DNA of 64,000 nt from Phaeosaccion multiseriatum (GCA_965112735.1 OZ218960.1:620001-684000), one strand, 5' to 3'; shown: positions 24,205 to 38,696, numbered from the stretch's first letter. Notes: generated by a model not told the origin, from the sequence alone. Numbers and translations are program-made.

Positions 24205-24790
24205 TCAGAGTAAAAACAAATCGAGGCCATTTTTTGTTTTCATTTTCATTTGTTGCAGTAATAAGAACATAAAAATAAATAAAAACAGTTCGAGGCCATT
24301 CTCTAATCAAAATGAATAAAAACAAATATGTCCGGCTTGTTGCGCTGTCGGCAGCTCCGGTACTCCCAGCCAATGCAAGAGGGTCATGTAGCTACACCCA
24401 CACACACCCACACACACTGCTTGAATTCATTATTAATTCGGTACTAATACTGTGTCATGCTTTACCACTAACTGCTGCGATACACTAACAATACAATAGG
24501 CCTCGCCGTCGGAGGCCCCCCACCATTTATAATTTATAATCACACGCTCAGCCACGCGAGCCTATTGAAAGAAAACAAAATAAAGTTTGCTCGTGCTGCC
24601 CCATGTATAACCAACTGCTGCTGCTGCTGGTGCTCTTGCTGCTACTGCTGCTGCTTGTGCTGCTGCTGCTGCTGCTTGTGCTGCTGCTCTTCCTTCAGTC
24701 GCATCTAGTCGCATCGCCCAGCCATACTTATAGGGGAGAATGTAATCTGTCATTTCTACCAATCAACCAATCAATCAATCAGTCAATCGA

Positions 24791-26649
24791 TCACTGCGGC
24801 AAGTACACGCACAACTGGTCCACCAGTCCGCACACCCTCCCCACCATGCTCTCCGGATCAGGCTGACTGCCAACAAAATATGAGCCTCCGACTAACTCGC
24901 GGCCTAGGTAATAGTCGGGGGCGGGGTATTCAACTCCGTTGCACTCGAAGATAGGCGGGTACACTTCCTCTGCTGGCCGCCAGCCGTACCCGGGGATAAA
25001 GATTGTATCGTAGTCCACAATCTCACACACCACAGTTGTCTCGCCACGGATGGCGGCGGCGGTCACGTAGTCAACTGTGGTGAGGCGAGGCAGTGAGGAA
25101 GGGAGAGGCAGAGAGAGGGCGCGAGCCGGTGTGCATGAGAGAGAGAGAGAGGACGAGACGAGAGAGAGAGAGAGAGAGAGAAGAGAGAGAGTGAGTGAGA
25201 GGAGAGAGAGAGAGAGAGAGAGGAGAGAGGCAGAGAGTGAAAGAGAGAGAAGAGAGAAAGAACAGAGAGCGAAAGACAGAGAGCGAAAGACGGGTCAATG
25301 GATGCTCTGCGATGTACCGGCCGCCCTTGAGCAGAGCAGGCCGGAGAAGAACATAGCTCTCAGCCACCACTACTCACAATGCGGTGGCATGCTTTGAGCA
25401 CTCGTGAAGGGAGGACGAAGACCGCGCCATTTCACTGGGTCTATCCAGGCATTTATCAACTCTCCGTCTGCTTCGCCGTCACAGTCGAAGACCCAGTGCC
25501 GAGCGATGACGATCGAGCCCGGATCTCCGTCGTCGCAAGTGAACGGAGTAGCTGGATCGAGGAGCGGCAGTGAGACTATGGAGAGCCATGCACAGCAGTC
25601 ATGGAAAGTCAGCAAACAACAAGCAACAAGGGGGGTGGGGCGGAGGGGGGCGGGCTTCATGGAATGAGCGGAGGAGAGGAGGAGACATACATGTACAAGC
25701 AATACCGATGGCAATCTCCCTCCTTTCGGTTCCGTCCCTCTTGCTCACATTTGGGAACATTGCCGCAGCTGCCGCCAGACCACGAGCAGCCGAAGGAGGA
25801 TGACGTCCAGCAGTTGCACGAGGCAGCGTCGGTGAAGGCACTGCAGCTGCCTTCCCATCCAAGCGAGGGACAGTCCACCTCACTGGGGGGAGGCGTCGGG
25901 GCCGGAGGGGGGGTCTGAATGACATCCCCAGAGGAGCACACGCCAAAAGCCCAGTTGCAGTTGAAGGAGGAGTTGCTCCAGCATTCGCACGAGGCACGGT
26001 CGGTGAAGGCACTGCAGCTGCCCGCCCATCCCAGCGAGGGACAGTTCACTTCCTCACCGCCGGTGGTGGGAGGAGGGGTGACGACAGTGTTGGGTGGGGG
26101 CGTCGGGGCCGGAGGGGGGGTGGGGGGGGGAGAGCCGCCCTGGGGGCACTCGATTCTGTCGGCGTAGACGCCCCAGCCGCAGAAGCGACAGTTGGCAGTT
26201 CCATCTGCATTGCACCCCAGCCCGCCGGAGATGCCCGGAGGGGTGTCGAGGCAGGTCTCGTCGACGTAGCAGGCTCGCGGGACGCCGTCAAACAGCTCCT
26301 CGCGGCAGCACGGGAAGAGATCTTCTGTTTACAGCAGTAGAGATCGAACAATTAGTAAGCAATGGGCGGGGCAGCGAGGTGCGGGCTTGGCTGCTTCTCG
26401 CTCGCTCGCGGAGAGAAAAGGGGAGCGACGAAATGGTGGGATAGCTAAAAGCAAGAGGTGTAGCTACCGCACAAGCGCAGGGGCGCCGGCGATGATGAGG
26501 AGGAGGAGGGAAAGGCGTGGCGCTAAACGAGACGATGGGCGGATCCGCCCCGCCCCCTCACCTTCTTGGGCTTGAAGCTTCCCGACGAGGAAGGCCAGCC
26601 CCGCCACCACCAGCAGCAGTGGGAATGTGCGCAGAGAAGACATCTTCAT
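24791..26649 (-). CDS. Secreted cysteine-rich modular protein, array copy 1 (~381 aa)
   Basis: Exons 26562-26649, 25749-26324, 25378-25575, 24791-25074. All introns are GT-AG and phase 1; total 1146 nt in frame. Architecture: signal peptide MKMSSLRTFPLLLVVAGLAFLVGKLQA, a CYVDETC..GGLGCNADGTANCRFCGWG module, Pro/Thr linkers, two 6-Cys repeats and a C-terminal 6-Cys domain. Confidence 0.85.
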
Positions 26650-27542
26650 GGTGCTTTTGCTTGTAGTCTTCATGTTCTCCTCTGTTCCCTGGTGATGCTT
26701 TTTGTGTTTGTGGCGAGGTTGCACATGGAACAAGGATAGAGCCGTTTTTATAGTTTTTCGCGGGGTTTGCTGTCCGCTCCGAAGGCGGCCAAATTCAAGT
26801 TCAGAGGGATAAGCAGCTGAATTCTCTTGGATGATGTACAAGTAGGGGGTAGTATGAAAGCCCCCCTACTCTTTGGGCTGGTTCAGGAGATGTCATACCA
26901 CTTTGGGTTGCTTAGATGTCACACGGGGCTCTCCTGGCTGGACTAGTTAGGAGGTGAGAGAATTGGAATCTTAGCTCTACTGCTGGAGGAGGCTTCTTAG
27001 TAGCTACATGATCTGGCAAGCAAGGATAGAGGTCAAGATGGGTGGGGAAGGATAGATCCTCCTATTTTGCCCCGCTGTTTCACTTCTTGTCAGCCGCACC
27101 GTCTCCTCTAGCTAGCGCTTCAGAGGCACAATGAGCGACAAGCAAGGCTCCAGCAGAGGGCACATTTCAGTTGACGCCTTGCTTCGTAATCAGTGCCATA
27201 CAAGCGGGGGGGGGGGGATATGGAGGAGGGAAATGGAGCAGAAAGCGGGGACAGCAGCACAAGAGGAGAGACGCGTGAAGAGAGGGAGGAAGGATGGGGC
27301 AGCAGCAGGAGGCAGCGAGCGAGAGAGGGGGCAAAGGATGACGAAAGCAACAGACGAGCGAGGACGAGAGGAGAGGGGAGAGAGGCACAAAACAGTGAGG
27401 ATATAGCTAGAGGAGGAGAGGAGAGGAGGTCACAACATTCGTATGGCCTCAGAGAAAAGGAAGACGGAGAAGGGGAGGAGGAGACTCGGGGGGGCGGGAG
27501 AGACGTGGCATTCAATGGAGAGAACAGCAGCCGGAGAGGTGG

Positions 27543-27775
27543 CTGGCTGGTCGACCCCTGACACGCTATCCGCTATCCGCTATCGCCGGCGCCAGCCGGT
27601 GCGCTATCCGCTATCGCCGGCGCCAGCCGGCTTTGGGGGGGGGGGTTGTGGGGGCGTGCTATCCGCTGTCGCCGGCGCCAGCCGATCCGGGCGCCAGCCG
27701 ATCCGCTATCGGCCGGCGGCCGATAGCGCGATAGCGCGCTATCGAGAAAGTGGGCGATAGCGTGTCAGGGGTCGA
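27543..27775. mobile_element. MITE-like non-autonomous DNA element A
   Basis: Perfect 20-bp inverted repeats TCGACCCCTGACACGCTATC (27551-27570) and GATAGCGTGTCAGGGGTCGA (27756-27775), with internal GCTATC/GATAGC repeats. Flanked by direct repeat AGGTGG (27537-27542, 27776-27781). Absent at the paralogous sites ~31615 and ~36045. Confidence 0.85.
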
Positions 27776-28333
27776 AGGTGGGAGAGAGGGAGCCGAGAAA
27801 GAGGACGACGTTGAAGCGTGGCGTGACGAGTTTAATGCAGCATGTTGAAGATATTGCCAGGCTATCGTCCAAGCACGAGCGAAGAGACCCGTTCCCCTTG
27901 GTTACTGGTACTTGAAGAAGACGCAGACGGAGTTCCTGGAGGGGGGGCGAGGGCAGCAGCTCTGGGGTGGGGGCGGGGGGTGAGACTCGCCGGTGACTCC
28001 GTGTGAACCCTCCACGCCGCAAGAGGGACGAGAGGGTAAGGAGGGAGGGCGCGGAGAGCTGGGAGAGCATGGAGGGCAGGGAGAGGGTAATTGGTTGGTT
28101 GGTTGGTTGGGTTCGTTGGCCTGTCGGAGGCCCCCCACCATTTATAATTTACAATCACGCGCTCAGCCACGCGAGCTTGCTATTGAAAGAGAAACAAACT
28201 AAAGTTTGCTCGTGCTGCCCCATGTATAACCAACTGCTGCTGCTGCTTGTGCTGCTGCTCTGCCTTCAGACGCATCGCCCATGCTCAAGGGAGAACATAA
28301 CATATCATATCTATCAACCAATCAATCAATCGA

Positions 28334-30245
28334 TCACTGCGGCAAGTACTCGCACAACTGGTCCACCAGTCCGCACACCCTCCCCACCATGCTCTCCGGA
28401 TCAGGCTGACTGCCAAAAAACATTGAGTCTCCGACTCTCACGCGGCCTAGGAAATAGTGGACAGCGGGGTATTCAACTCCGTTGCACTCGAAGATAGGGT
28501 TGTACACTTCCTCTTCTGGTCGTGGGCTGCCGTTTATGCTGCCGGCGGGGCGGAAAATGAATGTCTCGTAGTCGACAATTTCACACACCACAGTTGTCTC
28601 GCCACGGTTGGCGGCGTCGGTCACGTAGTCAACTGTGGTGGGACGAGGCAGCGAGGAAGGGAGAGAGAGTGGGAGAGAGCCCGTGTGCGTGAGAGAGAGA
28701 GAGGAGACGAGAGAGAGAGAGAGAGAGAGCGAGAGAGGAGAGCGAGAGCGAAAGAGTGAATGCATGCTCTGCGATATACCGCCCTGCCTCGAGCAGAGCA
28801 GGCCGGAGAAGAACATGTTCTTGGCTGCGCTCTCACCACCACTCACATCTCGGTGGTATGCTTTCAGCACTCGTGAACGGAGGAAGAGGAGCGCGCGATC
28901 TGAATGGGTCTATCCAGGCATTTATCAACTCTCCGTCTGCTTCGCCGTCACAGTCGAAGACCCAGTTCCGAAGGAGGTCGCGAGTATCCGGGTCGCCATC
29001 GTCGCAAAGTACCGCTGGGTCGAGGAGCGGCAGTGAGACTACAATGGACAGTCACGGACAACAGTCATGGAAAGCCAGCAAAAACAACAAGCAACAAGGG
29101 GGGGGCGGGCTTCACGAAATGAGCGGAGTCAGACTATGGAGAGCCATGCACAGCAGTCATGGAAAGTCAGCAAACAACAAGCAAAAAGGGGGGTGGGGCG
29201 GAGGGGGGGCGGGCTTCATGGCTGGAATGGCTGAGCGGAGGAGACATATGTACAAGCAATACCGATGGCAATCTCCCTCCCTTCCCGTCCCTCTTGCTCA
29301 CATTTGGGAACATTGCCGCAGCTGCCGCCAGACCACGAGCAGCCGAAGGAGGATGACGTCCAGCAGTTGCACCAGGCAGCGTCGATGAAGGCACTGCAGC
29401 TGCCCGGCCATCGCAGCGCGGCGCAGTTCACCTCCTCACCGATGGTGGGAGGAGGGGTGACGGCAGTGCTGGGTGGGGGCGTCGGGGCCGGAGGGGGGGT
29501 CTGAATGACATCCCCAGAGGAGCACACGCCAAAAGCCCAGTTGCAGTTGAAGGAGGAGTTGCTCCAGCATTCGCACGAGGCAGCGTCGGTGAAGGTACTG
29601 CAGCTGCCCGCCCATCCCAGCGAGGGACAGTTCACTTCCTCACCGCCGGTGGTGGGAGGAGGGGTGACGGCAGTGTTGGGTGGGGGCGTCGGGGCCGGGG
29701 GGGGGGGGGGGGGGGAGAGCCGCCCTGGGGGCACTCGATTCTGTCGGCGTAGACGCCCCAGCCGCAGAAGCGACAGTTGGCAGTTCCATCTGCATTGCAC
29801 CCCAGCCCGCCGGAGATGCCCGGAGGGGTGTCGAGGCAGGTCTCGTCGACGTAGCAGGCTCGCGGAACGCCGCCCACCAGCTCCTCACGGCAGCACGGGA
29901 AGAGATCTTCTGTTTACAGCAGTAGAGATTGAACAATTAGTAAGCAATGGGCCAGCAGCCAGCGAGGTGTGGGCTTCTCGCTCGGAGAGGAGAAGGGAGC
30001 GAAGAATGGTGGGATGATAGCTAAAAGGAGCGAAGAGCAGCGAGCGAGCGAGGTGTAGCTCTAGCTACCGCACAAGCGCAGCCAGGGGGCGGCGCCGGCG
30101 ACGATGAGGAGGAGAAGGGAAAAGCGTGACGTGAAATGACGATGGATCCGCCCCCCTCACCTTCTTGCGCTTGAAGCTTCCCGACGAGGAAGGCCAGCCC
30201 CGCCACCATCGGCAGTGGGTATGCGCGCAGCAAAGGTATCTTCAT
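28334..30245 (-). CDS. Secreted cysteine-rich modular protein, array copy 2 (frameshift in G19 tract at 29697-29715; sequencing error or pseudogene)
   Basis: Exons 30161-30245, 29302-29909, 28847-29038, 28334-28632, with the same architecture and splice sites as copy 1. Exon 2 is 608 nt, 1 nt short of frame, at a pure G run. Confidence 0.78.
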
Positions 30246-30771
30246 GGTCGTGTTTGCAGTCTTCCTGTTCTCCTCTCTGCTCCTTGACGCTGCTTTTTGT
30301 GTTTGTGGCACGAGGGAGACCAGTGGCATCGAAATCACGCTCCAGTGGGCATCGAAATCACGCTCCAGTGGGCATCGAAATCACGCCATGGAAACACGCA
30401 GAGGGGGAGAGTGCTTTAGATTTTTCGCGGGATTGTCCGAAGGCGGCCGGGTTCAGATCTCTCACTGAAGTACTTAAGCACTGCGGCCGGGATAGATGTC
30501 TACGGGTTCAGTAGGGGGCATCCCCTACTTCTTCGGCCTAGCCTAGTTCAAACGTTACACGGTTCGGGGTTCTCCTGGACTAGCTAATTAGGTGGTGGGA
30601 GTGTACAAAACTCAGGCCATTTGGAAGAGCACTGAAGGATGAAGGTAGTATCTGGCTGGGATACAGGTCGAAAGATAAAGTAGGGAGTATGAAAGCCCCC
30701 CCTACTCTTTGGCCTGGTTCAGATGTCACGCTTTTGGTTCGATGTCACGCTTTTGGTTAGATGTCACACGG

Positions 30772-31030
30772 CCGGTCAACAAAGCCCCCTGCCTCTACTG
30801 CACCTTCACAGGCGTGATCGTGCTTGTCGGCGGTGCGCCTTAGAAATAAGGCAATGAATGACGTCACAATAGTGCGTGATACTAAGTCAGGGAAACGTGA
30901 CGTGAGAACCGTCACAGGCGTGATTCGTGCTTCTGTGCACCGCTACTTGCGTGATTCGTGATTCTGTGCACCGCTACTTTCGTGATTCGTGCTTCTCGGC
31001 GCTCTCCCTCAGAATCACGTCAGGGGTCGA
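30772..31030. mobile_element. Non-autonomous element B, with the same right terminus as A
   Basis: Insertion flanked by ACACGG (30766-30771, 31031-31036); the empty site GTCACACGGGGCT is at 26918-26930. Ends in CAGAATCACGTCAGGGGTCGA and has internal GTGATTC(G)TG repeats. Confidence 0.75.
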
Positions 31031-32130
31031 ACACGGGGCTCTCATGGACTAATTAGGAGCTGACAGGCAGTGTACGAAAGCCAGATAACTGGAACCTTAC
31101 TGGAGGCTTAGCTACATGGTCTGGCAAGGATAGAGGTCCAAAGATGGGTAGGGAAGGATACATCCTCCTATTTTGCCCCGTGGGTTCACTTGTCAGCCAC
31201 ACCGTCTCCTCTAGCTAGCGCTTCAGAGGCAATGACAAGGTTCCAGAGGGCACACTTCAGTTCGTAATCAGTGCCATACAAGCGGGGGGGGGGGATATGG
31301 AGGAGGGAAATGGAGCAGAAAGCGGGGACAGCAGCACCAGAGGAGAGACGCGTGAAGAGAGGGAGGAAGGATGGGGCAGCAGCAGGAGCAGGAGCGAGCG
31401 AGAGAGGGGGCAAAGGATGACGAAAGCAACAGACGAAGACGAGAGGACGGGAGAGAGGCACAAAGCAGTGAGGGTAGCTAGAGGGGGAGAGGAGAGGAGG
31501 CCACAACATTCGTATGGCCTCAGAGAAAAGGAAGACGGAGAAGGGGAGGAGTAGACTCGGGGGGGGCGGGAGAGACGTGCGTGGCATTCAATGGAGAGAA
31601 CAGCAGCAGGAGCGAGAGGTGAGAGAGAGGGAGCCGAGAAAGAGGACGACGCTGAAGCGTGGCGTGACGAGTTTAATGCAGCATGTTGAAGATATTGCCA
31701 GGCTATCGTCCAAGCACGAGCGAAGAGACCCGTTCCCCTTGGTTACTGGTACTTGAAGAAGACGCAGACGGAGTTCCTGGAGGGGGGGCGGGGCAGCAGC
31801 TCTGGGGTGGGGGCGGGGGGTGAGACTCGCCGGTGACTCCGTGTGAACCCTCCACGCCGCAAGAGGGGCGAGAGGGTCAGGAGGGAGGGCGCGGAGAGCT
31901 GGGAGAGCATGGAGGGCAGGGAGAGGGTAATTGGTCGGTTGGTTGGTTGGTTTCGTTGGGTTCGTTGGTTGGTTGGTTTGGTTGGTTTGGTTGGGTTGGT
32001 TGATTGGTTGGCCTGTCGACTCGGAGGCCCCCCACCATGTATGATTTATAATCACGCGCTCAGCCACGCGCGCCTATCGAAAGAAAGCAAACAAACAGTT
32101 TGCTCGTGCTGCCCCATGTATAACCAACTG

Positions 32131-32170
<40 letters not shown>

Positions 32171-32273
32171 TGCTGCTGGCTGCTGCTCTTCCTTCAGTCA
32201 CATCGCCCATCCTTAAGGGAGAATATAATCTGCCATTTCTACCAATCAACCAATCAATCAATCACTCAATCGA

Positions 32274-34093
32274 TCACTGCGGCAAGTACACGCACAACTG
32301 GTCCACCAGTCCGCACACTCTCCCCACCATGCTCTCCGGATCAGCGACGCCATACCATGTGCTTCCGATTAATGTGGGGCCTAGGTAGTAGTTGGGAGCG
32401 GGGTATTCAACTCCGTTGCACTCGAAGATAGGGGAGTACACTTCCTGTTGGCTGCCGACAGGAATTGGAAGAAAGAGTGTATCGTAGTCTACAATCTCAC
32501 ACACTAAAGTTGTCTCGCCACGGTTGGCGGCGTCGGTCACGTAGTCAACTGTGGTGGGGAGAGAGAGAGAGCGAGAGAGAGAGAGAGGGAGAGAGTCCGT
32601 GTGCGTGTGTGAGAGAGAGAGACAGAGAGGAGACAAGAGAGAGAGAGAGGAGAGAGAGAAAGAAAGAGAGAGAGAGGAGAGAGAGTGAAAGAGAGAGAAG
32701 AGAGAGAGAGAAAAGAGAGGGAGAGGAGACAGAGAGCGAAAGACAAGTCAATGGATGCTCTGCGATATACCGCCCTTGAGCAGAGCAGGCCGGAGAAGAA
32801 CATGTTCTTGAGCTCTCACCACTACTCACATTTCGGTGGTATGCTTTCAGCACTCGTGAAGAGAGGAAGAACGCGCGATTTCACTGGGTCTATATAGGCA
32901 TTTATCAACTCTCCGTCTGCTTCGCCGTCACAGTCGAAGACCCAGTTCCGAGCGATGACGATCGAGCCCGGGTCGCCGTCGTCGCAAATCAACGGAGTAG
33001 CTGGATCGAGGAGCGGCAGTGAGACTATGGAGAGCCATGCACAGCAGTCATAGAAAGTCAGCAAACAACAAGCAAAAAGGGGGGTGGGGCGGAGGGGGGC
33101 GGGCTTCATGGAATGAGCGGAGGAGAGGAGGAGACATACATGTACAAGCAATACCGATGGCAATCTCCCTCCCTTCCCGTCCCTCTTGCTCACATTTGGG
33201 AACATTGCCGCAGCTGCCGCCAGACCACGAGCAGCCGAAGGAGGATGACGTCCAGCAGTTGCACCAGGCAGCGTCGATGAAGGCACTGCAGCTGCCCGGC
33301 CATCCCAGCGCGGCGCAGTTCACCTCCTCATCGATGGTGGGAGGAGGGGTGGGCGCGGGTGTAGGATGGGGGCTCAGAATGAAGTCGCCAGAACCGCAGA
33401 CGCCAAACGCCCAGTAGCACTCAAAGGCTGAGGTGGCCCAGCATTCGCACGAGGCACGGTCGGTGAAGGCGCTGCAGCTGCCCGGCCATCCCAGCGAGGG
33501 ACAGTTCACTTCCTCACCGCCGGTGGTGGGAGGAGGGGTGACGACAGTGTTGGGTGGGGGCGTCGGGGCCGGAGGGGGGGTGGGGGGGGGAGAGCCGCCC
33601 TGGGGGCACTCGATTCTGTCGGCGTAGACGCCCCAGCCGCAGAAGCGACAGTTGGCAGTTCCATCTGCATTGCACCCCAGCCCGCCGGAGATGCCCGGAG
33701 GGGTGTCGAGGCAGGTCTCGTCGACGTAGCAGGCTCGCGGAACGCCGCCCACCAGCTCCTCACGGCAGCACGGGAAGAGATCTTCTGTTTACAGCAGTAG
33801 AGATTGAACAATTAGTAAGCAATGGGCCAGCAGCCAGCGAGGTGTGGGCTTCTCGCTCGGAGAGAAAAGGGGAGCGAAGAACGGTGGGATGATAGCTAAA
33901 AGGAGCGAAGAGAGAGGAGAGATAGGGGCGCCGGCGACGATGAGGAGGAGAAGGGAAAGGAGAAGGGAAAGGCGTGACGTGAAATGACGATGGATCCGCC
34001 CCCCTCACCTTCTTGGGCTTGAAGCTTCCCGACAAGGAAGGCCAGCCCCGCCACCACCAGCAGTGGGAATGCGCGCAGCAAAGATATCTTCAT
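32274..34093 (-). CDS. Secreted cysteine-rich modular protein, array copy 3 (~381 aa)
   Basis: Exons 34009-34093, 33194-33784, 32830-33024, 32274-32548; 1146 nt in frame. Signal peptide MKISLLRAFPLLVVAGLAFLVGKLQA. Confidence 0.85.
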
Positions 34094-34402
34094 GGTGTTT
34101 GCAGTCTTCCTGTTCTCCTCTGCTCCTTGCCGCTGCTTTTTGTGTTTGTGGCACGAGGGAGACCAGTGGCATCGAGATCACCAGTGGAAATCACGCAAGG
34201 GGAAGGAAGGGGGGGTAAAAAGGGTGGTCACTGTGTGTGGAGAGTGCTTTTGATTTTTCGAAGGGTTGTCCGAAGGCGGCCGCCTTCAATTTCCTCATTT
34301 CGTGTCACTACTTCCTGCTTCTGGCCAGCGCCAGCCGGCCTGCTTTCTGCTTCGCGCATGTCAGGGGCCGACCTGTAATCAGATAATCTTGTCCAGGGTC
34401 GA

Positions 34403-35118
34403 CTCCCTCCCTCCCTCCCTCCCTCCCTCCCTCCCTCCCTCCCTCCCTCCCTCCCTCCCTCCCTCCCTCCCTCCCTCCCTCTCCCCTCCCTCCCTCCCTC
34501 CCTCCCTCCCTCCCTCCCTCCCTCCCTCCCTCCCTCCCTCCCTCCCTCCCTCCCTCCCTCCCTCCCTCCCTCCCTCCCTCCCTCCCTCCCTCCCTCCCTC
34601 CCTCCCTCCCTCCCTCCCTCCCTCCCTCCCTCCCTCCCTCCCTCCCTCCCTCCCTCCCTCCCTCCCTCCCTCCCTCCCTCCCTCCCTCCCTCCCTCCCTC
34701 CCTCCCTCCCTCCCTCCCTCCCTCCCTCCCTCCCTCCCTCCCTCCCTCCCTCCCTCCCTCCCTCCCTCCCTCCCTCCCTCCCTCCCTCCCTCCCTCCCTC
34801 CCTCCCTCCCTCCCTCCCTCCCTCCCTCCCTCCCTCCCTCCCTCCCTCCCTCCCTCCCTCCCTCCCTCCCTCCCTCCCTCCCTCCCTCCCTCCCTCCCTC
34901 CCTCCCTCCCTCCCTCCCTCCCTCCCTCCCTCCCTCCCTCCCTCCCTCCCTCCCTCCCTCCCTGCCTCCCTCCCTCCCTCCCTCCCTCCCTCCCTCCCTC
35001 CCTCCCTCCCTCCCTCCCTCCCTCCCTCCCTCCCTCCCTCCCTCCCTCCCTCCCTCCCTCCCTCCCTCCCTCCCTCCCTCCCTCCCTCCCTCCCTCCCTC
35101 CCTCCCTCCCTCCCTCCC
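34403..35118. repeat. (CCCT)n microsatellite, ~715 bp, intergenic
   Basis: Near-perfect array in the spacer between array copies 3 and 4. Confidence 0.97.
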
Positions 35119-35245
35119 TTGCTTCCTGCTTCTGGCCGGCGCCAGAGGGCCTGCTTCCTGCTTCTGGGCTGGCCTGTCTCAGAAGCATGTCAGGGGCCGA
35201 ACAGGAACGCCTAGCGGCCTAGGCCTATTTGGGAAAACTGCCCGG

Positions 35246-35480
35246 CGTGATTCTGGGGGACGAGGCGTGATGCGTGATTCTGTGCACCTTCACAGGCGTG
35301 ATTCGTGCTTGTCGGCGGTGCGCCTTAGAAATAAGGTAATGAATGACGTCATAGCGCGTCATAATAAGTCAGGGAAACGTGATTCGTGCTTCTGTGCACC
35401 GCTACTTACATTCGTGATTCTGTGCACCGCTACTTGCGTGATTCGTGCTTCTCGGCGCTCTCCCTCAGAATCAGGGTCGA
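35246..35480. mobile_element. Second copy of element B at the paralogous site (left end truncated)
   Basis: Same internal sequence as 30800-31030, ending AGAATCAGGGTCGA|ACACGG. The left CGTGATTCTGGGGGA matches the reverse complement of the right subterminal region. Confidence 0.68.
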
Positions 35481-36659
35481 ACACGGGGCTCTCCTGGACT
35501 AACCAGGAGGTGACAGTGTCCGAAAGCTAGATAACTGGAATCTTACTGGAGGCTTAGCTACATGGTCTGGCAAGGATAGAGGTCCAAAGATGGGTAGGGA
35601 AGGATACATTCTCCTATTTTACCCCGCTGGTTCACTTGTCAGCCACACCGTCTCCTCTAGCTAGAGCTTCACAGGCAATGACAAGGTTCCAAAGGGCACA
35701 CTTCAGTTCGTAATCAGTGTCATAGCTACAAGCGGGGGGGGGGGATATGGAGGAGGGAAATGGAGCAGAAAGCGGGGACAGCAGCACCAGAGGAGAGACT
35801 GGTGAAGAGAGGGAGGAAGGATGGGGCAGCAGCAGGAGCGAGCGAGAGAGGGGGCAAAGGATGACGAAAGCAACAGGAGAGAGGCACAAAACAGTGAGGG
35901 TATAGCTAGAGGGGGAGAGGAGAGGAGGTCACAACATTCGTATGGCCTCAGAGAAAAGGAAGACGGAGAAGGGGAGGAGGAGACTCAGGGGGGCGGGAGA
36001 GACGTGCGTGGCATTCAATGGAGAGCACAGCTGCAGGAGCGAGAGGTGAGAGAGAGGGAGCCGAGAAAGAGGACGACGTTGAAGCGTGGAGTGACGAGTT
36101 GCTTTAGTGCAACATGTTGAAGATATTCCCAGGCTATCGTCCAAGCACGAAGAGACCCGTGCGCATGCACACAGGTTGTTACTGGTACTTGAAGAAGACG
36201 CAGACGGAGTTCCTGGAGGGGGGGCGGGGCAGCAGCTCTGGGGTGGGGGCGGGGGGTGAGACTCGCCGGTGACTCCGTGTGAACCCTCCACGCCGCAAGA
36301 GGGACGAGAGGGTCAGGAGGGAGGGCGCGGAGAGCTGGGAGAGCATGGAGGGCAGGGAGAGGGTAATTGGTTGGTTGGTTGATTTGGTTGATTGGTTGGT
36401 TGGTTGGGTTGGCTGGTTGGTTGGTTGGTTTGCCTATCAGAGGCCGCGCACCCTAATAGTTTAATTTTAATAATCACGCGCTCAGCCACGCGAGCCTATT
36501 GAATGAAAACAAACTAAACTTTGCTTTCGGCTGCCCCATGTATGACCAACTGCTGCTGCTGCTGCTACTGCTGCTGGCTGCTGCTCTTCCTTCAGTCGCA
36601 TCGCCCATGCTCAAGGGAGAATACAATCTGTCATTTATACCAATCAATCAATCAATCAA

Positions 36660-38440
36660 TCAGTCAATCAATTCATACAAGCACAACTGGTCCACCAGTC
36701 CGCACACCCTCCCCAACATGCTCTGCGGATCAGGCTGGCCTGTGAAAATGGTGGGGCCTAGGTAGTAGTTGGGAGCGGGGTACTCAACTCCGTTGCACTC
36801 GAAGATGGGGGGGTACACTCTATCTTGGCCGTATCTGCCGGGGATAAAGATTGTATCGTAGTCCACAATCTCACACACCAAAGTTGTCTCGCCACGATTG
36901 GCGGCGTCGGTCACGTAGTCAACTGTGGTGGGGCGAGGGCAGCGAGGAAGGGAGAGACAGGGAGAGAGCGCACGAGCCCGTGTGCGTGTGTGTGTGGGAG
37001 AGAGGGAGAGAGGAGAGAGAGAGCGCGAAGGAGAGGGGAGAGAGAGAGAGCGAGAGAGAGAGAGCGAGAGAGAGAGAGGGAGAGGAGACAGAGAGCGAAA
37101 GACGGGTCAATGGCTGCTCTGCGATATACCGCCCTCGAGCAGAGCAGGCCGGAGAAGAACATAGCTCTCAGCCACCACTACTACTCACAATGCGGTGGCA
37201 TGTTTTGAGCGCTCGAGATGATATGATAAGTGCGCTGCACCGGTGGGTCTCTCCAGGCATTTATCAACTCTCCGTCTGCTTCGCCGTCACAGTCGAAGAC
37301 CCAGTTCCGAACTACGGCGCGGGTATACGGATCTCCGTCGTCGCAAGTCAACGGAGTAGCCGAGTCGAGGAGCGGCAGTGAGACTATGGAGAGCCACATA
37401 CAGCGGTTATGGAAAGTCAGCAAGCAACAAGCAACAAGGGGGGGAGGGGACGCGGGGGGGCGGGCTTCATGGAATGAGCGGAGGAGAGGAGAAGACACAC
37501 ATGTACAAGCAATACCGATGGCACTCTCCCTCCCTTCCCGTCCCTGCCTCTTGCTCACATTTGGGAACATTGCCGCAGCTGCCGCCAGACCACGAGCAGC
37601 GGAAGGAGGATGACGTCCAGCAGTTGCACGAGGCAGCGTCGGTGAAGGCACTGCAGCTGCCCGCCCATCCCAGCGAGGCACAGTTCACTTCCTCACCGCC
37701 GGTGGTGGGAGGAGGGGTGACGGCAGTGCTGGGTGGCGGCGTCGGGGCCGAAGGGGGGGTCTGAATGATATCCCCAGAGGAGCACACGCCAGGAATCCCA
37801 GCGACCCAGTTGCAGTTGAAGGAGGAGTTGCTCCAGCATTCGCACGAGGCACGGTCGGTGAAGGCACTGCAGCTGCCCGCCCATCCCAGCGAGGGACAGT
37901 TCACTTCCTCACCGCCCGTGATGGGAGGAGGGGTGACGGTGTGTTGGGTTGGGGCGAGAGGCGTCGGGGCCGGAGGGGGGGTAGGGGGGGGAGAGCCGCC
38001 CTGGGGGCACTCGATTTTGTCGGCGTAGACGCCCCACCCGCAGAAGCGACAGTTGGCAGTTCCATCTGCATTGCACCCCAGCCCGCCGGAGATGCCCGGA
38101 GGGGTATCGAGGCAGGTCTCGTCGACGTAGCAGGCTCGCGGAACGCCGCCCACCAGCTCCTCACGGCAGCACGGGAAGAGATCTTCTGTTTACAGCAGTA
38201 GAGGTTGAACAATTAAAAGAAGAAAGGGAGAGAAGGGAGCGAAGAAATGGTGGGATAGCTAAAAGGAAGAGGTGAAGCCAGCGCACAAGCGTAGGGGCAC
38301 CGGCAATGATGAGGAGGAGGAGGGAAAGGTGTGGCGCGGAACGACGATGGATCACCTTCTTGGGCTTGAAGCTTCCCGACGAGGAAGGCCAGCCCCGCCA
38401 CCACCAGCAGTGGGAATGCACGCAGCAAAGATATCTTCAT
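36660..38440 (-). CDS. Secreted cysteine-rich modular protein, array copy 4 (~389 aa, altered C-terminus LCLYELID)
   Basis: Exons 38356-38440, 37559-38185, 37189-37383, 36660-36922; 1170 nt in frame. Confidence 0.84.
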
Positions 38441-38696
38441 GATGTCTTTCTCCTCTGCTCCTTGCCGCTGCTGTTTGTGTTTTTCACCCCATGGAACACT
38501 CGGAGAGGATTTAGAGCCGTTTTTGATGATTATTCGCGGTGTTGTCCGAACGTCGACAACTGTGAAGTCTTGTTGGCGCCAACAATCTACGCCAATTTTG
38601 TCGGGCGAGACCAAGCAGCTCAAGCACGACTTGGTCACCGGAGAGGCCGTCCTGAGTGGGCGTCAGCAGGTCTTGCCCGATCCAATTCTCAGCAGA

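What the first reader, a model, noticed from the sequence alone, without database searches (positions are those of the whole stretch)
24791..38440. Tandem array of secreted Cys-scaffold proteins with four CDR-like hypervariable loops: a candidate variable recognition system in an alga
Seen: the four paralogs share an almost invariant N-terminal module and very similar introns, 3' flanks and spacers. In the C-terminal 6-Cys domain (exons 3-4), near-invariant framework blocks (CDDGDP, WVFDCDGEADGELINA, RGETTxVCEIVDY, PIFECNGVEYPA, DPxSMxGRVCGLVDQLC) alternate with four segments that differ in sequence, three of them also in length through in-frame indels. Copies 1/2/3/4 read as follows. HV1: GSIVIARH / DTRDLLRN / GSIVIARN / YTRAVVRN. 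HV2: VKWRGLRPPF / FRSRAPLPPF / VKSRVLPLF / PVQRTYHII. HV3: IFIPGYGWRPAEE / FIFRPAGSINGSPRPEEE / LFLPIPVGSQQE / IFIPGRYGQDR. HV4: RELVGGSYFVGSQ / RVRVGDSMFFGSQ / PTLIGSTWYGVA / PTIFTGQ. The loops are rich in aromatic residues and Arg, and look more diverged than the neighbouring non-coding DNA. Inference: diversifying selection on a binding surface displayed from a Pro/Thr stalk, analogous to immunoglobulin CDRs. Possible roles are virus/pathogen/grazer recognition, self-nonself or mating recognition, or adhesion. I do not recognise the C-terminal domain as any named family.
Basis: partly seen in the sequence, partly recalled or inferred. Interest (0 to 1): 0.88.

Follow-up and report, generated by a model that had tools for sequence, protein, structure and literature searches.

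The report
Fast-changing loops in orphan algal proteins
Four neighbouring genes of an alga encode secreted cysteine-rich proteins with no detectable relatives, in which four short stretches of the tail domain differ two to five times more between copies than the introns do; this is the mark of surface loops kept different, but the shape, the target and the function are still unknown.

Summary
Four tandem minus-strand paralogs at 24791-38440 have four exons each, and all twelve introns are GT..AG. In a public run from a second sample, a contig matching copy 3 at every copy-specific base joins exon 2 to exon 3 exactly as modelled, and another contig shows the intron 1 splice.

- **Divergence:** the four variable segments differ at 35-42% of bases. 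Introns differ at 7-17%, framework blocks at 2.5-17% and the N-terminal module at 2%.
- **Clustering:** variable residues are non-randomly clustered (P<5e-5).
- **Shuffling:** the copies carry different combinations of loop types, so recombination or gene conversion has re-assorted them.

Three corrections are needed. Copy 2 is frameshifted in a C19 run. The loops are rich in Arg but not in aromatics. The stalk linkers are short.

Codon models give omega 1.6-1.7 for all loops (p=0.06-0.10). HV2 is significant (omega about 9, p=0.004), HV4 is suggestive, and HV1 and HV3 are not. No homolog or fold was found for the tail domain, and the spliced domain could not be folded. The two middle modules look weakly PSI-like.

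Another first-reader note covers this same stretch. The scan's notes also list similar arrays elsewhere in this genome, but not on other DNA.

The parts
24791..26649 (-). Copy 1 gene, ATG to stop. Four exons: 26649-26562, 26324-25749, 25575-25378, 25074-24791. Product 381 aa.
   Evidence: Gene model with GT..AG introns; tblastn.
28334..30245 (-). Copy 2 gene. Exons 30245-30161, 29909-29302, 29038-28847, 28632-28334. The CDS length is not a multiple of 3.
   Evidence: The reading frame is open on both sides of the poly-C tract.
29697..29715 (-). C19 homopolymer in exon 2 of copy 2. It is one base shorter than the C9-A-C7-T-C2 tract of copy 1, which gives an apparent frameshift. It could be an assembly error, a recent lesion or a slippage-prone tract.
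   Evidence: Read contigs break at this tract, so it could not be verified.
32274..34093 (-). Copy 3 gene. Exons 34093-34009, 33784-33194, 33024-32830, 32548-32274. Product 381 aa. This copy is transcribed.
   Evidence: The run X5 contig (record 25) carries all copy-3-specific bases and joins exon 2 to exon 3.
36660..38440 (-). Copy 4 gene. Exons 38440-38356, 38185-37559, 37383-37189, 36922-36660. Product 389 aa, with a different C-terminal end (LYELID).
25496..25519 (-). HV1 of copy 1 (GSIVIARH). Same type as copy 3.
25406..25435 (-). HV2 of copy 1 (VKWRGLRPPF).
24968..25003 (-). HV3 of copy 1 (IFIPGYGWRPAE).
24863..24901 (-). HV4 of copy 1 (RELVGGSYFVGSQ). Same type as copy 2.
28965..28988 (-). 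HV1 of copy 2 (DTRDLLRN). Same type as copy 4.
28875..28904 (-). HV2 of copy 2 (FRSRAPLPPF).
28511..28558 (-). HV3 of copy 2 (IFRPAGSINGSPRPEE). This is the longest HV3, with an internal CGGCAGC direct repeat that suggests slippage.
28406..28444 (-). HV4 of copy 2 (RVRVGDSMFFGSQ).
32945..32968 (-). HV1 of copy 3 (GSIVIARN).
32858..32884 (-). HV2 of copy 3 (VKSRVLPLF).
32445..32477 (-). HV3 of copy 3 (LFLPIPVGSQQ).
32346..32378 (-). HV4 of copy 3 (PTLIGSTWYGV). Same type as copy 4.
37304..37327 (-). HV1 of copy 4 (YTRAVVRN).
37217..37243 (-). HV2 of copy 4 (PVQRTYHII). This is the most divergent HV2.
36822..36851 (-). HV3 of copy 4 (IFIPGRYGQD).
36735..36755 (-). HV4 of copy 4 (PTIFTGQ). This is the shortest HV4.

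Best explanation
This is a small inherited repertoire of secreted, modular, probably glycosylated proteins that are specific to this algal lineage.

**Architecture.** Each protein runs as follows:
1. A signal peptide.
2. An almost invariant 8-Cys N-terminal module.
3. Two 6-Cys modules that look weakly PSI-like, joined by short Pro/Thr linkers.
4. A C-terminal acidic 6-Cys domain of about 165 residues, encoded by exons 3-4.

**What is shown.**
- Four short segments between invariant framework blocks of that last domain differ between copies far more than neutral DNA does.
- They also differ by in-frame indels, while the Cys and the reading frame are kept.
- Loop types occur in different combinations in different copies.
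- The N-terminal exon is homogenised.

**What is inferred.**
- The segments are exposed loops.
- Ordinary substitutions and slippage indels in them have been fixed by selection for difference. This is clearest in HV2 and possible in HV4.
- Gene conversion or unequal crossing-over between the tandem copies re-assorts the loops and keeps the rest uniform.
- The constant N-terminal part gives a common attachment or partner, and the variable basic loops on the acidic head give each copy a different binding specificity for an external ligand. That ligand could be a pathogen or virus, a cell-surface partner in mating or adhesion, or a target of a secreted effector.
For: - Gene models and splice sites.
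- A copy-3 transcript contig joins exon 2 to exon 3 exactly as modelled, and the intron 1 joint also appears in run X5.
- HV base divergence is 0.35-0.42, against introns at 0.07-0.17 and framework at 0.025-0.17. This is significant in all six pairs.
- Variable residues are clustered.
- NG86 counts: HV pN 0.40 and pS 0.29, framework pN 0.074 and pS 0.145.
- ML codon model: tree length 3.7-4.1 per codon in HV against 0.6 in the framework. omega is 1.6-1.7 for HV and 0.5 for the framework. HV2 omega is about 9 (p=0.004) and HV4 about 4 (p=0.08).
- Topologies conflict. HV1 supports c1+c3 | c2+c4 with 6 sites. Introns and flanks support c1+c4 | c2+c3 with 9-11 sites each. HV4 groups c1+c2 | c3+c4.
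- N-module silent divergence is 0.05, against 0.145-0.156 elsewhere, which points to homogenisation.
- The loops are Arg-rich (11%) on a framework with 20% Asp+Glu.
- All indels in exons 3-4 are in frame, in all four copies.
Against: - With only four sequences the omega>1 test for all loops together is not significant (p=0.06-0.10). The loops were also picked because they vary.
- HV1 has omega about 1, and HV3 cannot be aligned reliably.
- Silent sites inside the loops are twice as diverged as in the framework. This fits old loop lineages that escaped conversion as well as it fits positive selection.
- There is no structure. Exon 4 alone gave pLDDT 49.8, so exposure of the loops and clustering on one face are untested.
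- No homolog, domain or ligand is known.
- One of the four copies may be a pseudogene.
- Expression is shown for copy 3 only.
Confidence: 0.5

Rival explanations
1. The loops are under relaxed constraint and gene conversion does the rest. The four segments are tolerant surface loops that drift at about the neutral rate. Frequent conversion between the tandem copies homogenises the introns, the framework and the N-terminal exon. Conversion tracts are rejected or stop at the already diverged loops, which therefore merely look accelerated. No selection for diversity is needed.
For: - omega for all loops is not significantly above 1, and HV1 omega is about 1.
- Loop silent divergence is 0.29, twice that of the framework.
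- There are clear signs of conversion: mosaic topologies and N-module pS of 0.05.
Against: - HV2 has 56 replacement against 7 silent differences, giving omega about 9 (p=0.004).
- The loops are only 24-54 bases long, separated by framework blocks of 60-70 bases. Heterology-limited conversion would have to act at a very fine scale.
- Framework silent divergence (0.145) equals intron divergence, so the framework of exons 3-4 does not look specially homogenised.
- The loops have a biased composition (Arg 11%, Gly 13%, almost no acidic residues) rather than a random one.
Confidence: 0.3
2. These are structural cell-wall or extracellular-matrix glycoproteins. The acidic Cys-rich head binds Ca2+ or wall polymers, as the frustulin ACR domains and pleuralins of diatoms do. 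The copies differ because they have sub-functionalised or drifted, not because they recognise variable targets.
For: - Signal peptide, Pro/Thr linkers and no anchor.
- The framework has 20% Asp+Glu, with motifs CDDGDP and DCDGEADGE.
- Diatom wall proteins combine Pro-rich parts, acidic Cys-rich domains and variable C-termini (PMC4557024).
Against: - No sequence similarity to anything was found: not in 1.84 billion representatives (exon 4 profile), nor in the metagenome, viral or prokaryote scans.
- This reading does not explain why divergence is concentrated in four short segments at two to five times the intron rate.
- Frustulin sequences were not compared directly.
Confidence: 0.12
3. This is a secreted toxin, antimicrobial or allelopathic effector family that evolves by accelerated change or switching of exon segments. 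The analogues are the ASSET phenomenon of snake three-finger toxins and the conotoxins, which have a conserved N-terminal part and a hypervariable Cys-framework product. This is a special case of diversifying selection in which the target lies in another organism.
For: - The genomic signature is the same: exon segments are distinctly different while the introns stay similar, the Cys scaffold is conserved, and the genes are tandem duplicates (PMC2474615).
- HV1 occurs as two sharply distinct types next to 60 bases that differ at only 0-3 positions in any pair.
Against: - No similarity to any toxin or effector family.
- The product is a large multi-module protein, not a small peptide.
- No processing site has been identified.
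- No donor segments lie elsewhere in the window.
Confidence: 0.08

Closest known systems
[quoted passage not shown]
   Same: A tandem multigene family of secreted proteins with a conserved Cys scaffold. Short exon segments are distinctly different between paralogs while the introns stay similar. The changed segments alter charge.
   Different: The protein is unrelated and about 380 residues long, with several modules. It comes from an alga, and no toxin function is known. Here the loops are also visibly re-assorted among the copies.
Conotoxin and plant SCR/SP11 or defensin-like families: constant signal or N-terminal part with hypervariable inter-cysteine loops (own knowledge; conotoxins are also covered in PMC6178336, which was listed but not read)
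   Same: A conserved N-terminal region, invariant Cys and hypervariable loops between them. The roles are recognition or targeting.
   Different: Those are small peptides in large families. Here there are only four copies, and the variable domain is a roughly 165-residue acidic domain with no homology to them.
Candidate pathogen receptors of brown algae diversified by exon shuffling: LRR-ROCO and NB-ARC-TPR (PMC3341825, PMC11378527)
   Same: Both are proposed germline recognition repertoires in algae, with variation focused on binding parts and generated by recombination between repeated units.
   Different: Those are intracellular repeat proteins with one repeat per exon. Here the protein is a secreted Cys-rich head with variable loops inside two exons, and it has no LRR or TPR.
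Immunoglobulin CDR loops
   Same: Short variable loops alternate with an invariant framework, including length variation. This is an analogy of layout only.
   Different: No Ig domain was detected. There are no V(D)J-like segments or donor cassettes. All the variation seen is between germline paralogs.
PSI (plexin-semaphorin-integrin) domain, for the two 6-Cys modules of exon 2
   Same: A small Cys-rich module with a C-x-C-W...C-x-W pattern. The only three structural matches among 48,161 chains are the PSI domains of Met and RON (Z 2.0-2.7, rmsd 1.6-2.2 over 31-34 residues).
   Different: No Pfam PSI match even at E<=1. The modules have six Cys rather than eight, the model confidence is only 62-73, and the Z scores are very low.
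Diatom frustulins and pleuralins: acidic Cys-rich, Ca-binding wall glycoproteins (PMC4557024)
   Same: Secreted, with Pro-rich linkers, acidic Cys-rich domains and a variable C-terminal part.
   Different: No sequence relation was found by any search.

Membership tests
Immunoglobulin-type variable domain (CDR system) | Ig fold or Ig domain signature | tested here: not met
   No Pfam family at E<=1 for exons 3 and 4 of two copies. No PDB sequence match.
Immunoglobulin-type variable domain (CDR system) | Variable loops brought together on one face of the fold | tested here: inconclusive
   Exon 4 alone folded at pLDDT 49.8. The spliced exon 3-4 domain has no reference and could not be submitted.
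Immunoglobulin-type variable domain (CDR system) | Somatic or templated diversification from gene segments or donor cassettes | tested here: not met
   No HV-like fragments anywhere else in the 64-kb window beyond the four genes. Somatic change cannot be seen in contigs.
Multigene families with accelerated evolution of exon segments (ASSET-like) | Exon segments more diverged than the introns of the same genes | tested here: met
   HV 0.25-0.49 against introns 0.08-0.18 in all six pairs.
Multigene families with accelerated evolution of exon segments (ASSET-like) | Conserved cysteine scaffold and secretion signal | tested here: met
   Six invariant Cys in the tail domain and a conserved signal peptide. 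The signal peptide was judged by eye, as no predictor was available.
Multigene families with accelerated evolution of exon segments (ASSET-like) | Excess of replacement over silent change (omega>1) in the variable segments | tested here: inconclusive
   All HV: omega 1.6-1.7, p=0.06-0.10. HV2: omega about 9, p=0.004. HV4: about 4, p=0.08. HV1: about 1. HV3: unreliable.
PSI domain (Pfam PF01437), for the exon-2 modules | Match to the family profile | tested here: not met
   No hit at E<=1.
PSI domain (Pfam PF01437), for the exon-2 modules | PSI fold | tested here: inconclusive
   The only three matches with Z>=2 are the Met and RON PSI domains, but Z is only 2.0-2.7 and the model pLDDT is 62-73. 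Foldseek found nothing.
Frustulin ACR / pleuralin PSCD wall proteins | Sequence homology to ACR or PSCD domains | not tested
   No reference sequences were at hand. The general searches found no relatives at all.
Frustulin ACR / pleuralin PSCD wall proteins | Ca2+ binding by the acidic Cys-rich domain | not testable with these tools
   Only composition is known: the framework has 20% Asp+Glu.

The most novel reading that the evidence does not exclude
The array is a working combinatorial recognition repertoire of an alga. A constant anchoring part carries a new, lineage-specific binding fold. Its four loops are kept different by selection and are re-dealt among the tandem copies by gene conversion. 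It would be one instance of a genome-wide strategy, because the scan's notes list several other arrays in this genome with the same signature. It would be used against viruses, parasites or grazers, or for mate recognition.
Probability: 0.15. Interest if true: 0.75.

Novelty: new variant of a known kind. Interest (0 to 1): 0.45.

Why it matters
Little is known about how algae outside the green lineage recognise pathogens, mates or partners. A secreted protein family with no relatives in billions of sequences, whose only fast-changing parts are four short loops on a rigid Cys framework, is a concrete and small candidate to test by expression, localisation and binding. It would also offer a new small disulfide scaffold with loop tolerance already shown by nature.

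The evolutionary pattern itself is already well known from venom, defensin and self-incompatibility genes. With four copies, marginal selection tests and no structure, the case is suggestive rather than surprising.

Tried and rejected
**Homology searches that found nothing**
- Pfam on exons 2, 3 and 4 of two copies.
- The exon-4 profile against 1.84 billion representatives gave only two weak hits: a translated satellite and an unrelated Cys-rich repeat protein. Both were judged spurious.
- Word-based searches with exon 2, the N-module and a 6-Cys module.
- ESM Atlas feature search for exon 4, the N-module and exon 3.
- PDB sequence searches.
- Scans of metagenome, viral and prokaryote contigs with the exon 3 and exon 4 profiles.

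**Structure**
- Exon 4 gave pLDDT 49.8, and its fold search gave only noise at Z<=3.3.
- Exon 2 gave pLDDT 53. Foldseek found nothing, and VIA-align found only the weak PSI matches.
- The spliced exon 3-4 domain could not be folded or searched as one piece. It exists only as a join of two references, and I did not type it in.

**Other ideas tested**
- Donor cassettes for templated diversification: none in the window.
- Frame-shifted segments as the source of the loop differences: rejected, because the loop DNA itself differs at 35-42% of bases.
- Rfam: nothing in the window.
- The bacterial promoter/terminator scan does not apply to a eukaryote.
- Pfam on eight large neighbouring ORFs, to name the organism, gave nothing useful.
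- The C19 frameshift could not be checked in reads, because contigs break at that tract.

Full report
**What is there.** The region holds a tandem array of four units, about 24533-38482, with start-to-start spacing of 3.5-4.4 kb. Each unit has one gene on the minus strand and a spacer that is 80-91% identical between units. A tblastn search with the copy-1 product finds exactly four copies in the 64-kb window.

I built the gene models by aligning the four units and transferring the boundaries. Each gene has four exons, and all twelve introns are GT..AG. The exon 3 acceptor must be the upstream TAG|TCTCAC, because copy 4 has lost the CCAG further downstream and copy 2 has a 6-base in-frame deletion in the stretch between them. 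Copies 1 and 3 encode 381 residues and copy 4 encodes 389.

Copy 2 has a run of 19 C at 29697-29715 where copy 1 has C9-A-C7-T-C2. This is one base short and puts the rest of exon 2 out of frame. Everything downstream remains open and in splice phase, and its framework omega is like that of the others. The lesion is therefore either very recent or a homopolymer assembly error. The read contigs break at the tract, so it could not be settled.

**Expression.** Five public runs hold the stretch. Four come from one sample and cover introns and spacers alike, so they are DNA-like. The fifth (X5) comes from another sample.

- One X5 contig of 542 bases joins the last base of exon 2 directly to the first base of exon 3.
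- A separate X5 joint skips intron 1 exactly (29909 to 30161, ends CT..AC on the plus strand).
- The 542-base contig carries all five bases that distinguish copy 3 from copy 1 in exon 3. It also carries the two bases that distinguish copy 3 from copy 2 at the end of exon 2.

Copy 3 is therefore transcribed and spliced as modelled. The intron 3 junction was not seen. No X5 contig lay on exon 4 of copy 1, and almost none on exon 4 of copy 2. With contigs, that shows nothing about absence.

**The protein.** The product runs as follows:
1. A signal peptide, judged by eye.
2. An 8-Cys N-terminal module.
3. A Pro/Thr linker of about 26 residues.
4. A 6-Cys module.
5. A second Pro/Thr linker of 11-24 residues.
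6. A second 6-Cys module.
7. A short linker.
8. A domain of about 165 residues with six invariant Cys, encoded by exons 3 and 4.

There is no hydrophobic tail.

Nothing in this protein matches a known family. Pfam gave nothing at E<=1. A profile of exon 4 read against 1.84 billion representative proteins gave only two spurious weak hits. Word-indexed searches with exon 2, the N-module and a 6-Cys module gave nothing. The same was true of the ESM Atlas, PDB sequences, and scans of metagenome, viral and prokaryote contigs. The organism's own proteome is evidently not in those collections.

AlphaFold on exon 2 gave pLDDT 53 overall but 62-73 for the two 6-Cys modules. Of 48,161 solved chains, only three reached Z>=2, and all three are the PSI domains of Met or RON (Z 2.0-2.7, rmsd 1.6-2.2 Å over 31-34 residues). 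This fits the C-x-C-W...C-x-W pattern but is too weak for membership. Exon 4 alone folded at pLDDT 49.8, with strands on both sides of HV3, and its fold search returned only noise.

**The observation.** Mean pairwise base differences, substitutions only, are as follows:

| Region | Mean pairwise difference |
|---|---|
| HV1 | 0.35 |
| HV2 | 0.38 |
| HV3 | 0.42 |
| HV4 | 0.41 |
| Framework blocks of exons 3-4 | 0.025-0.17 |
| Introns 1, 2, 3 | 0.17, 0.07, 0.17 |
| 3' flank | 0.16 |
| N-module | 0.02 |

In every one of the six pairs the loops are 1.9-4.9 times more diverged than the introns (Fisher p from 2e-3 to 8e-17). Variable protein columns are clustered: 50 runs against 83 +/- 6 in permutations, and none of 20,000 permutations was as low. 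HV2, HV3 and HV4 differ in length, always in frame.

The loops are rich in Arg (11% against 2.4%) and Gly and almost free of acidic residues, while the framework is 20% Asp+Glu. Aromatic residues are not enriched (12.8% against 11.5%).

**Selection or escape from conversion?**
- Nei-Gojobori counts give pN 0.40 and pS 0.29 in the loops, against pN 0.074 and pS 0.145 in the framework.
- A four-taxon codon likelihood model gives omega 1.6-1.7 for the loops on any topology, but the test against omega=1 gives p=0.06-0.10. The framework has omega 0.5. Tree length is six times greater in the loops.
- Loop by loop: HV2 has omega about 9 (p=0.004), HV4 about 4 (p=0.08), HV1 about 1, and HV3 is saturated and cannot be aligned.
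- The loops were chosen for being variable, which inflates omega.
- Silent divergence is doubled in the loops. That points to older loop lineages, or to misalignment, in addition to any positive selection.

Recombination is evident. HV1 occurs as two types shared by c1+c3 and by c2+c4 (6 informative sites). HV4 groups c1+c2 against c3+c4. Introns and flanks group c1+c4 against c2+c3 (9-11 sites each). All four combinations of HV1 and HV4 types therefore exist. The N-module has silent divergence of only 0.05, a sign of homogenisation. No loop-like donor fragments lie elsewhere in the window.

**Reading.** The most likely account (about 0.5) is a small germline repertoire of secreted binding proteins. 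The constant N-terminal part gives a common attachment. The basic loops on an acidic Cys-locked head differ between copies because differences were favoured, and they are re-dealt by gene conversion. The main rival (about 0.3) is tolerant loops that drift and escape conversion. A structural wall-protein role (PMC4557024) and a toxin-like effector role are further possibilities.

The closest described pattern is accelerated evolution or switching of exon segments with conserved introns in snake three-finger toxin genes (PMC2474615). In algae, the nearest concept is the exon-shuffled candidate receptors of brown algae (PMC3341825). The immunoglobulin comparison is an analogy of layout only.

**Limits.**
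- There are only four sequences.
- There is no structure of the whole tail domain. The spliced product has no reference, and I did not type it in.
- No relatives, ligand or condition of expression are known.
- The organism is known to me only as an alga. Another note of the scan calls it a stramenopile, which I did not check.

Noticed in passing
window 29697-29715: A C19 homopolymer inside the Pro-rich linker codons of copy 2 causes an apparent -1 frameshift. The other copies interrupt the run with A and T. It could be an assembly error or a slippage-prone tract that switches the gene off.
   Followed up: partly
window 27510-27900: A very high-copy repeat sits in spacer 1 only. Summed contig depth there is about 84,000, against about 100 for neighbouring DNA, and it fills the gap in spacer homology between 27536 and 27776. 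This fits the MITE-like element noted by another reader.
   Followed up: partly
window 34403-35119: A (CTCC)x179 microsatellite is inserted in spacer 3. It creates long artefactual ORFs on both strands (SLPP and GREG repeats).
   Followed up: no
window 29748-29909 (and the equivalent part of the other copies): Contigs of 0.9-1.4 kb in all runs match the N-module part of exon 2 with 16 differences in about 161 bases, and the match ends at the exon border. At least one other gene elsewhere in the genome shares this module, and it is present in the RNA-like run X5.
   Followed up: no
window 33360-33480 (copy 3, first 6-Cys module) and 37800-37830 (copy 4): The first PSI-like module of copy 3 is a further divergent patch: 25-40 differences in 235 bases against the other copies (WATSAFECYW...GSGDFILSPHP). 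Copy 4 has a 3-residue insertion there (VAGIPG).
   Followed up: partly
window 25764-25957 and 29256-29449: The second 6-Cys module has roughly ten times the summed contig depth of the neighbouring single-copy DNA (about 10-20-fold in copy 1, about 4-10-fold in copy 2). The module is probably used by further genes in the genome.
   Followed up: no
window 30320-30386: A 23-base unit is repeated three times directly upstream of copy 2, and copy 3 has a similar upstream sequence. Copies 1 and 4 have unrelated sequence there, so the promoter-proximal regions of the copies differ.
   Followed up: no
window 25137-25283, 28661-28756, 32559-32736, 36998-37095; 24615-24688, 32128-32187: Every copy has a (TC)n microsatellite in intron 3 and a (CAG)n run in its 3' flank, each of different length. 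Most of the intron 'divergence' counted with gaps comes from these.
   Followed up: no
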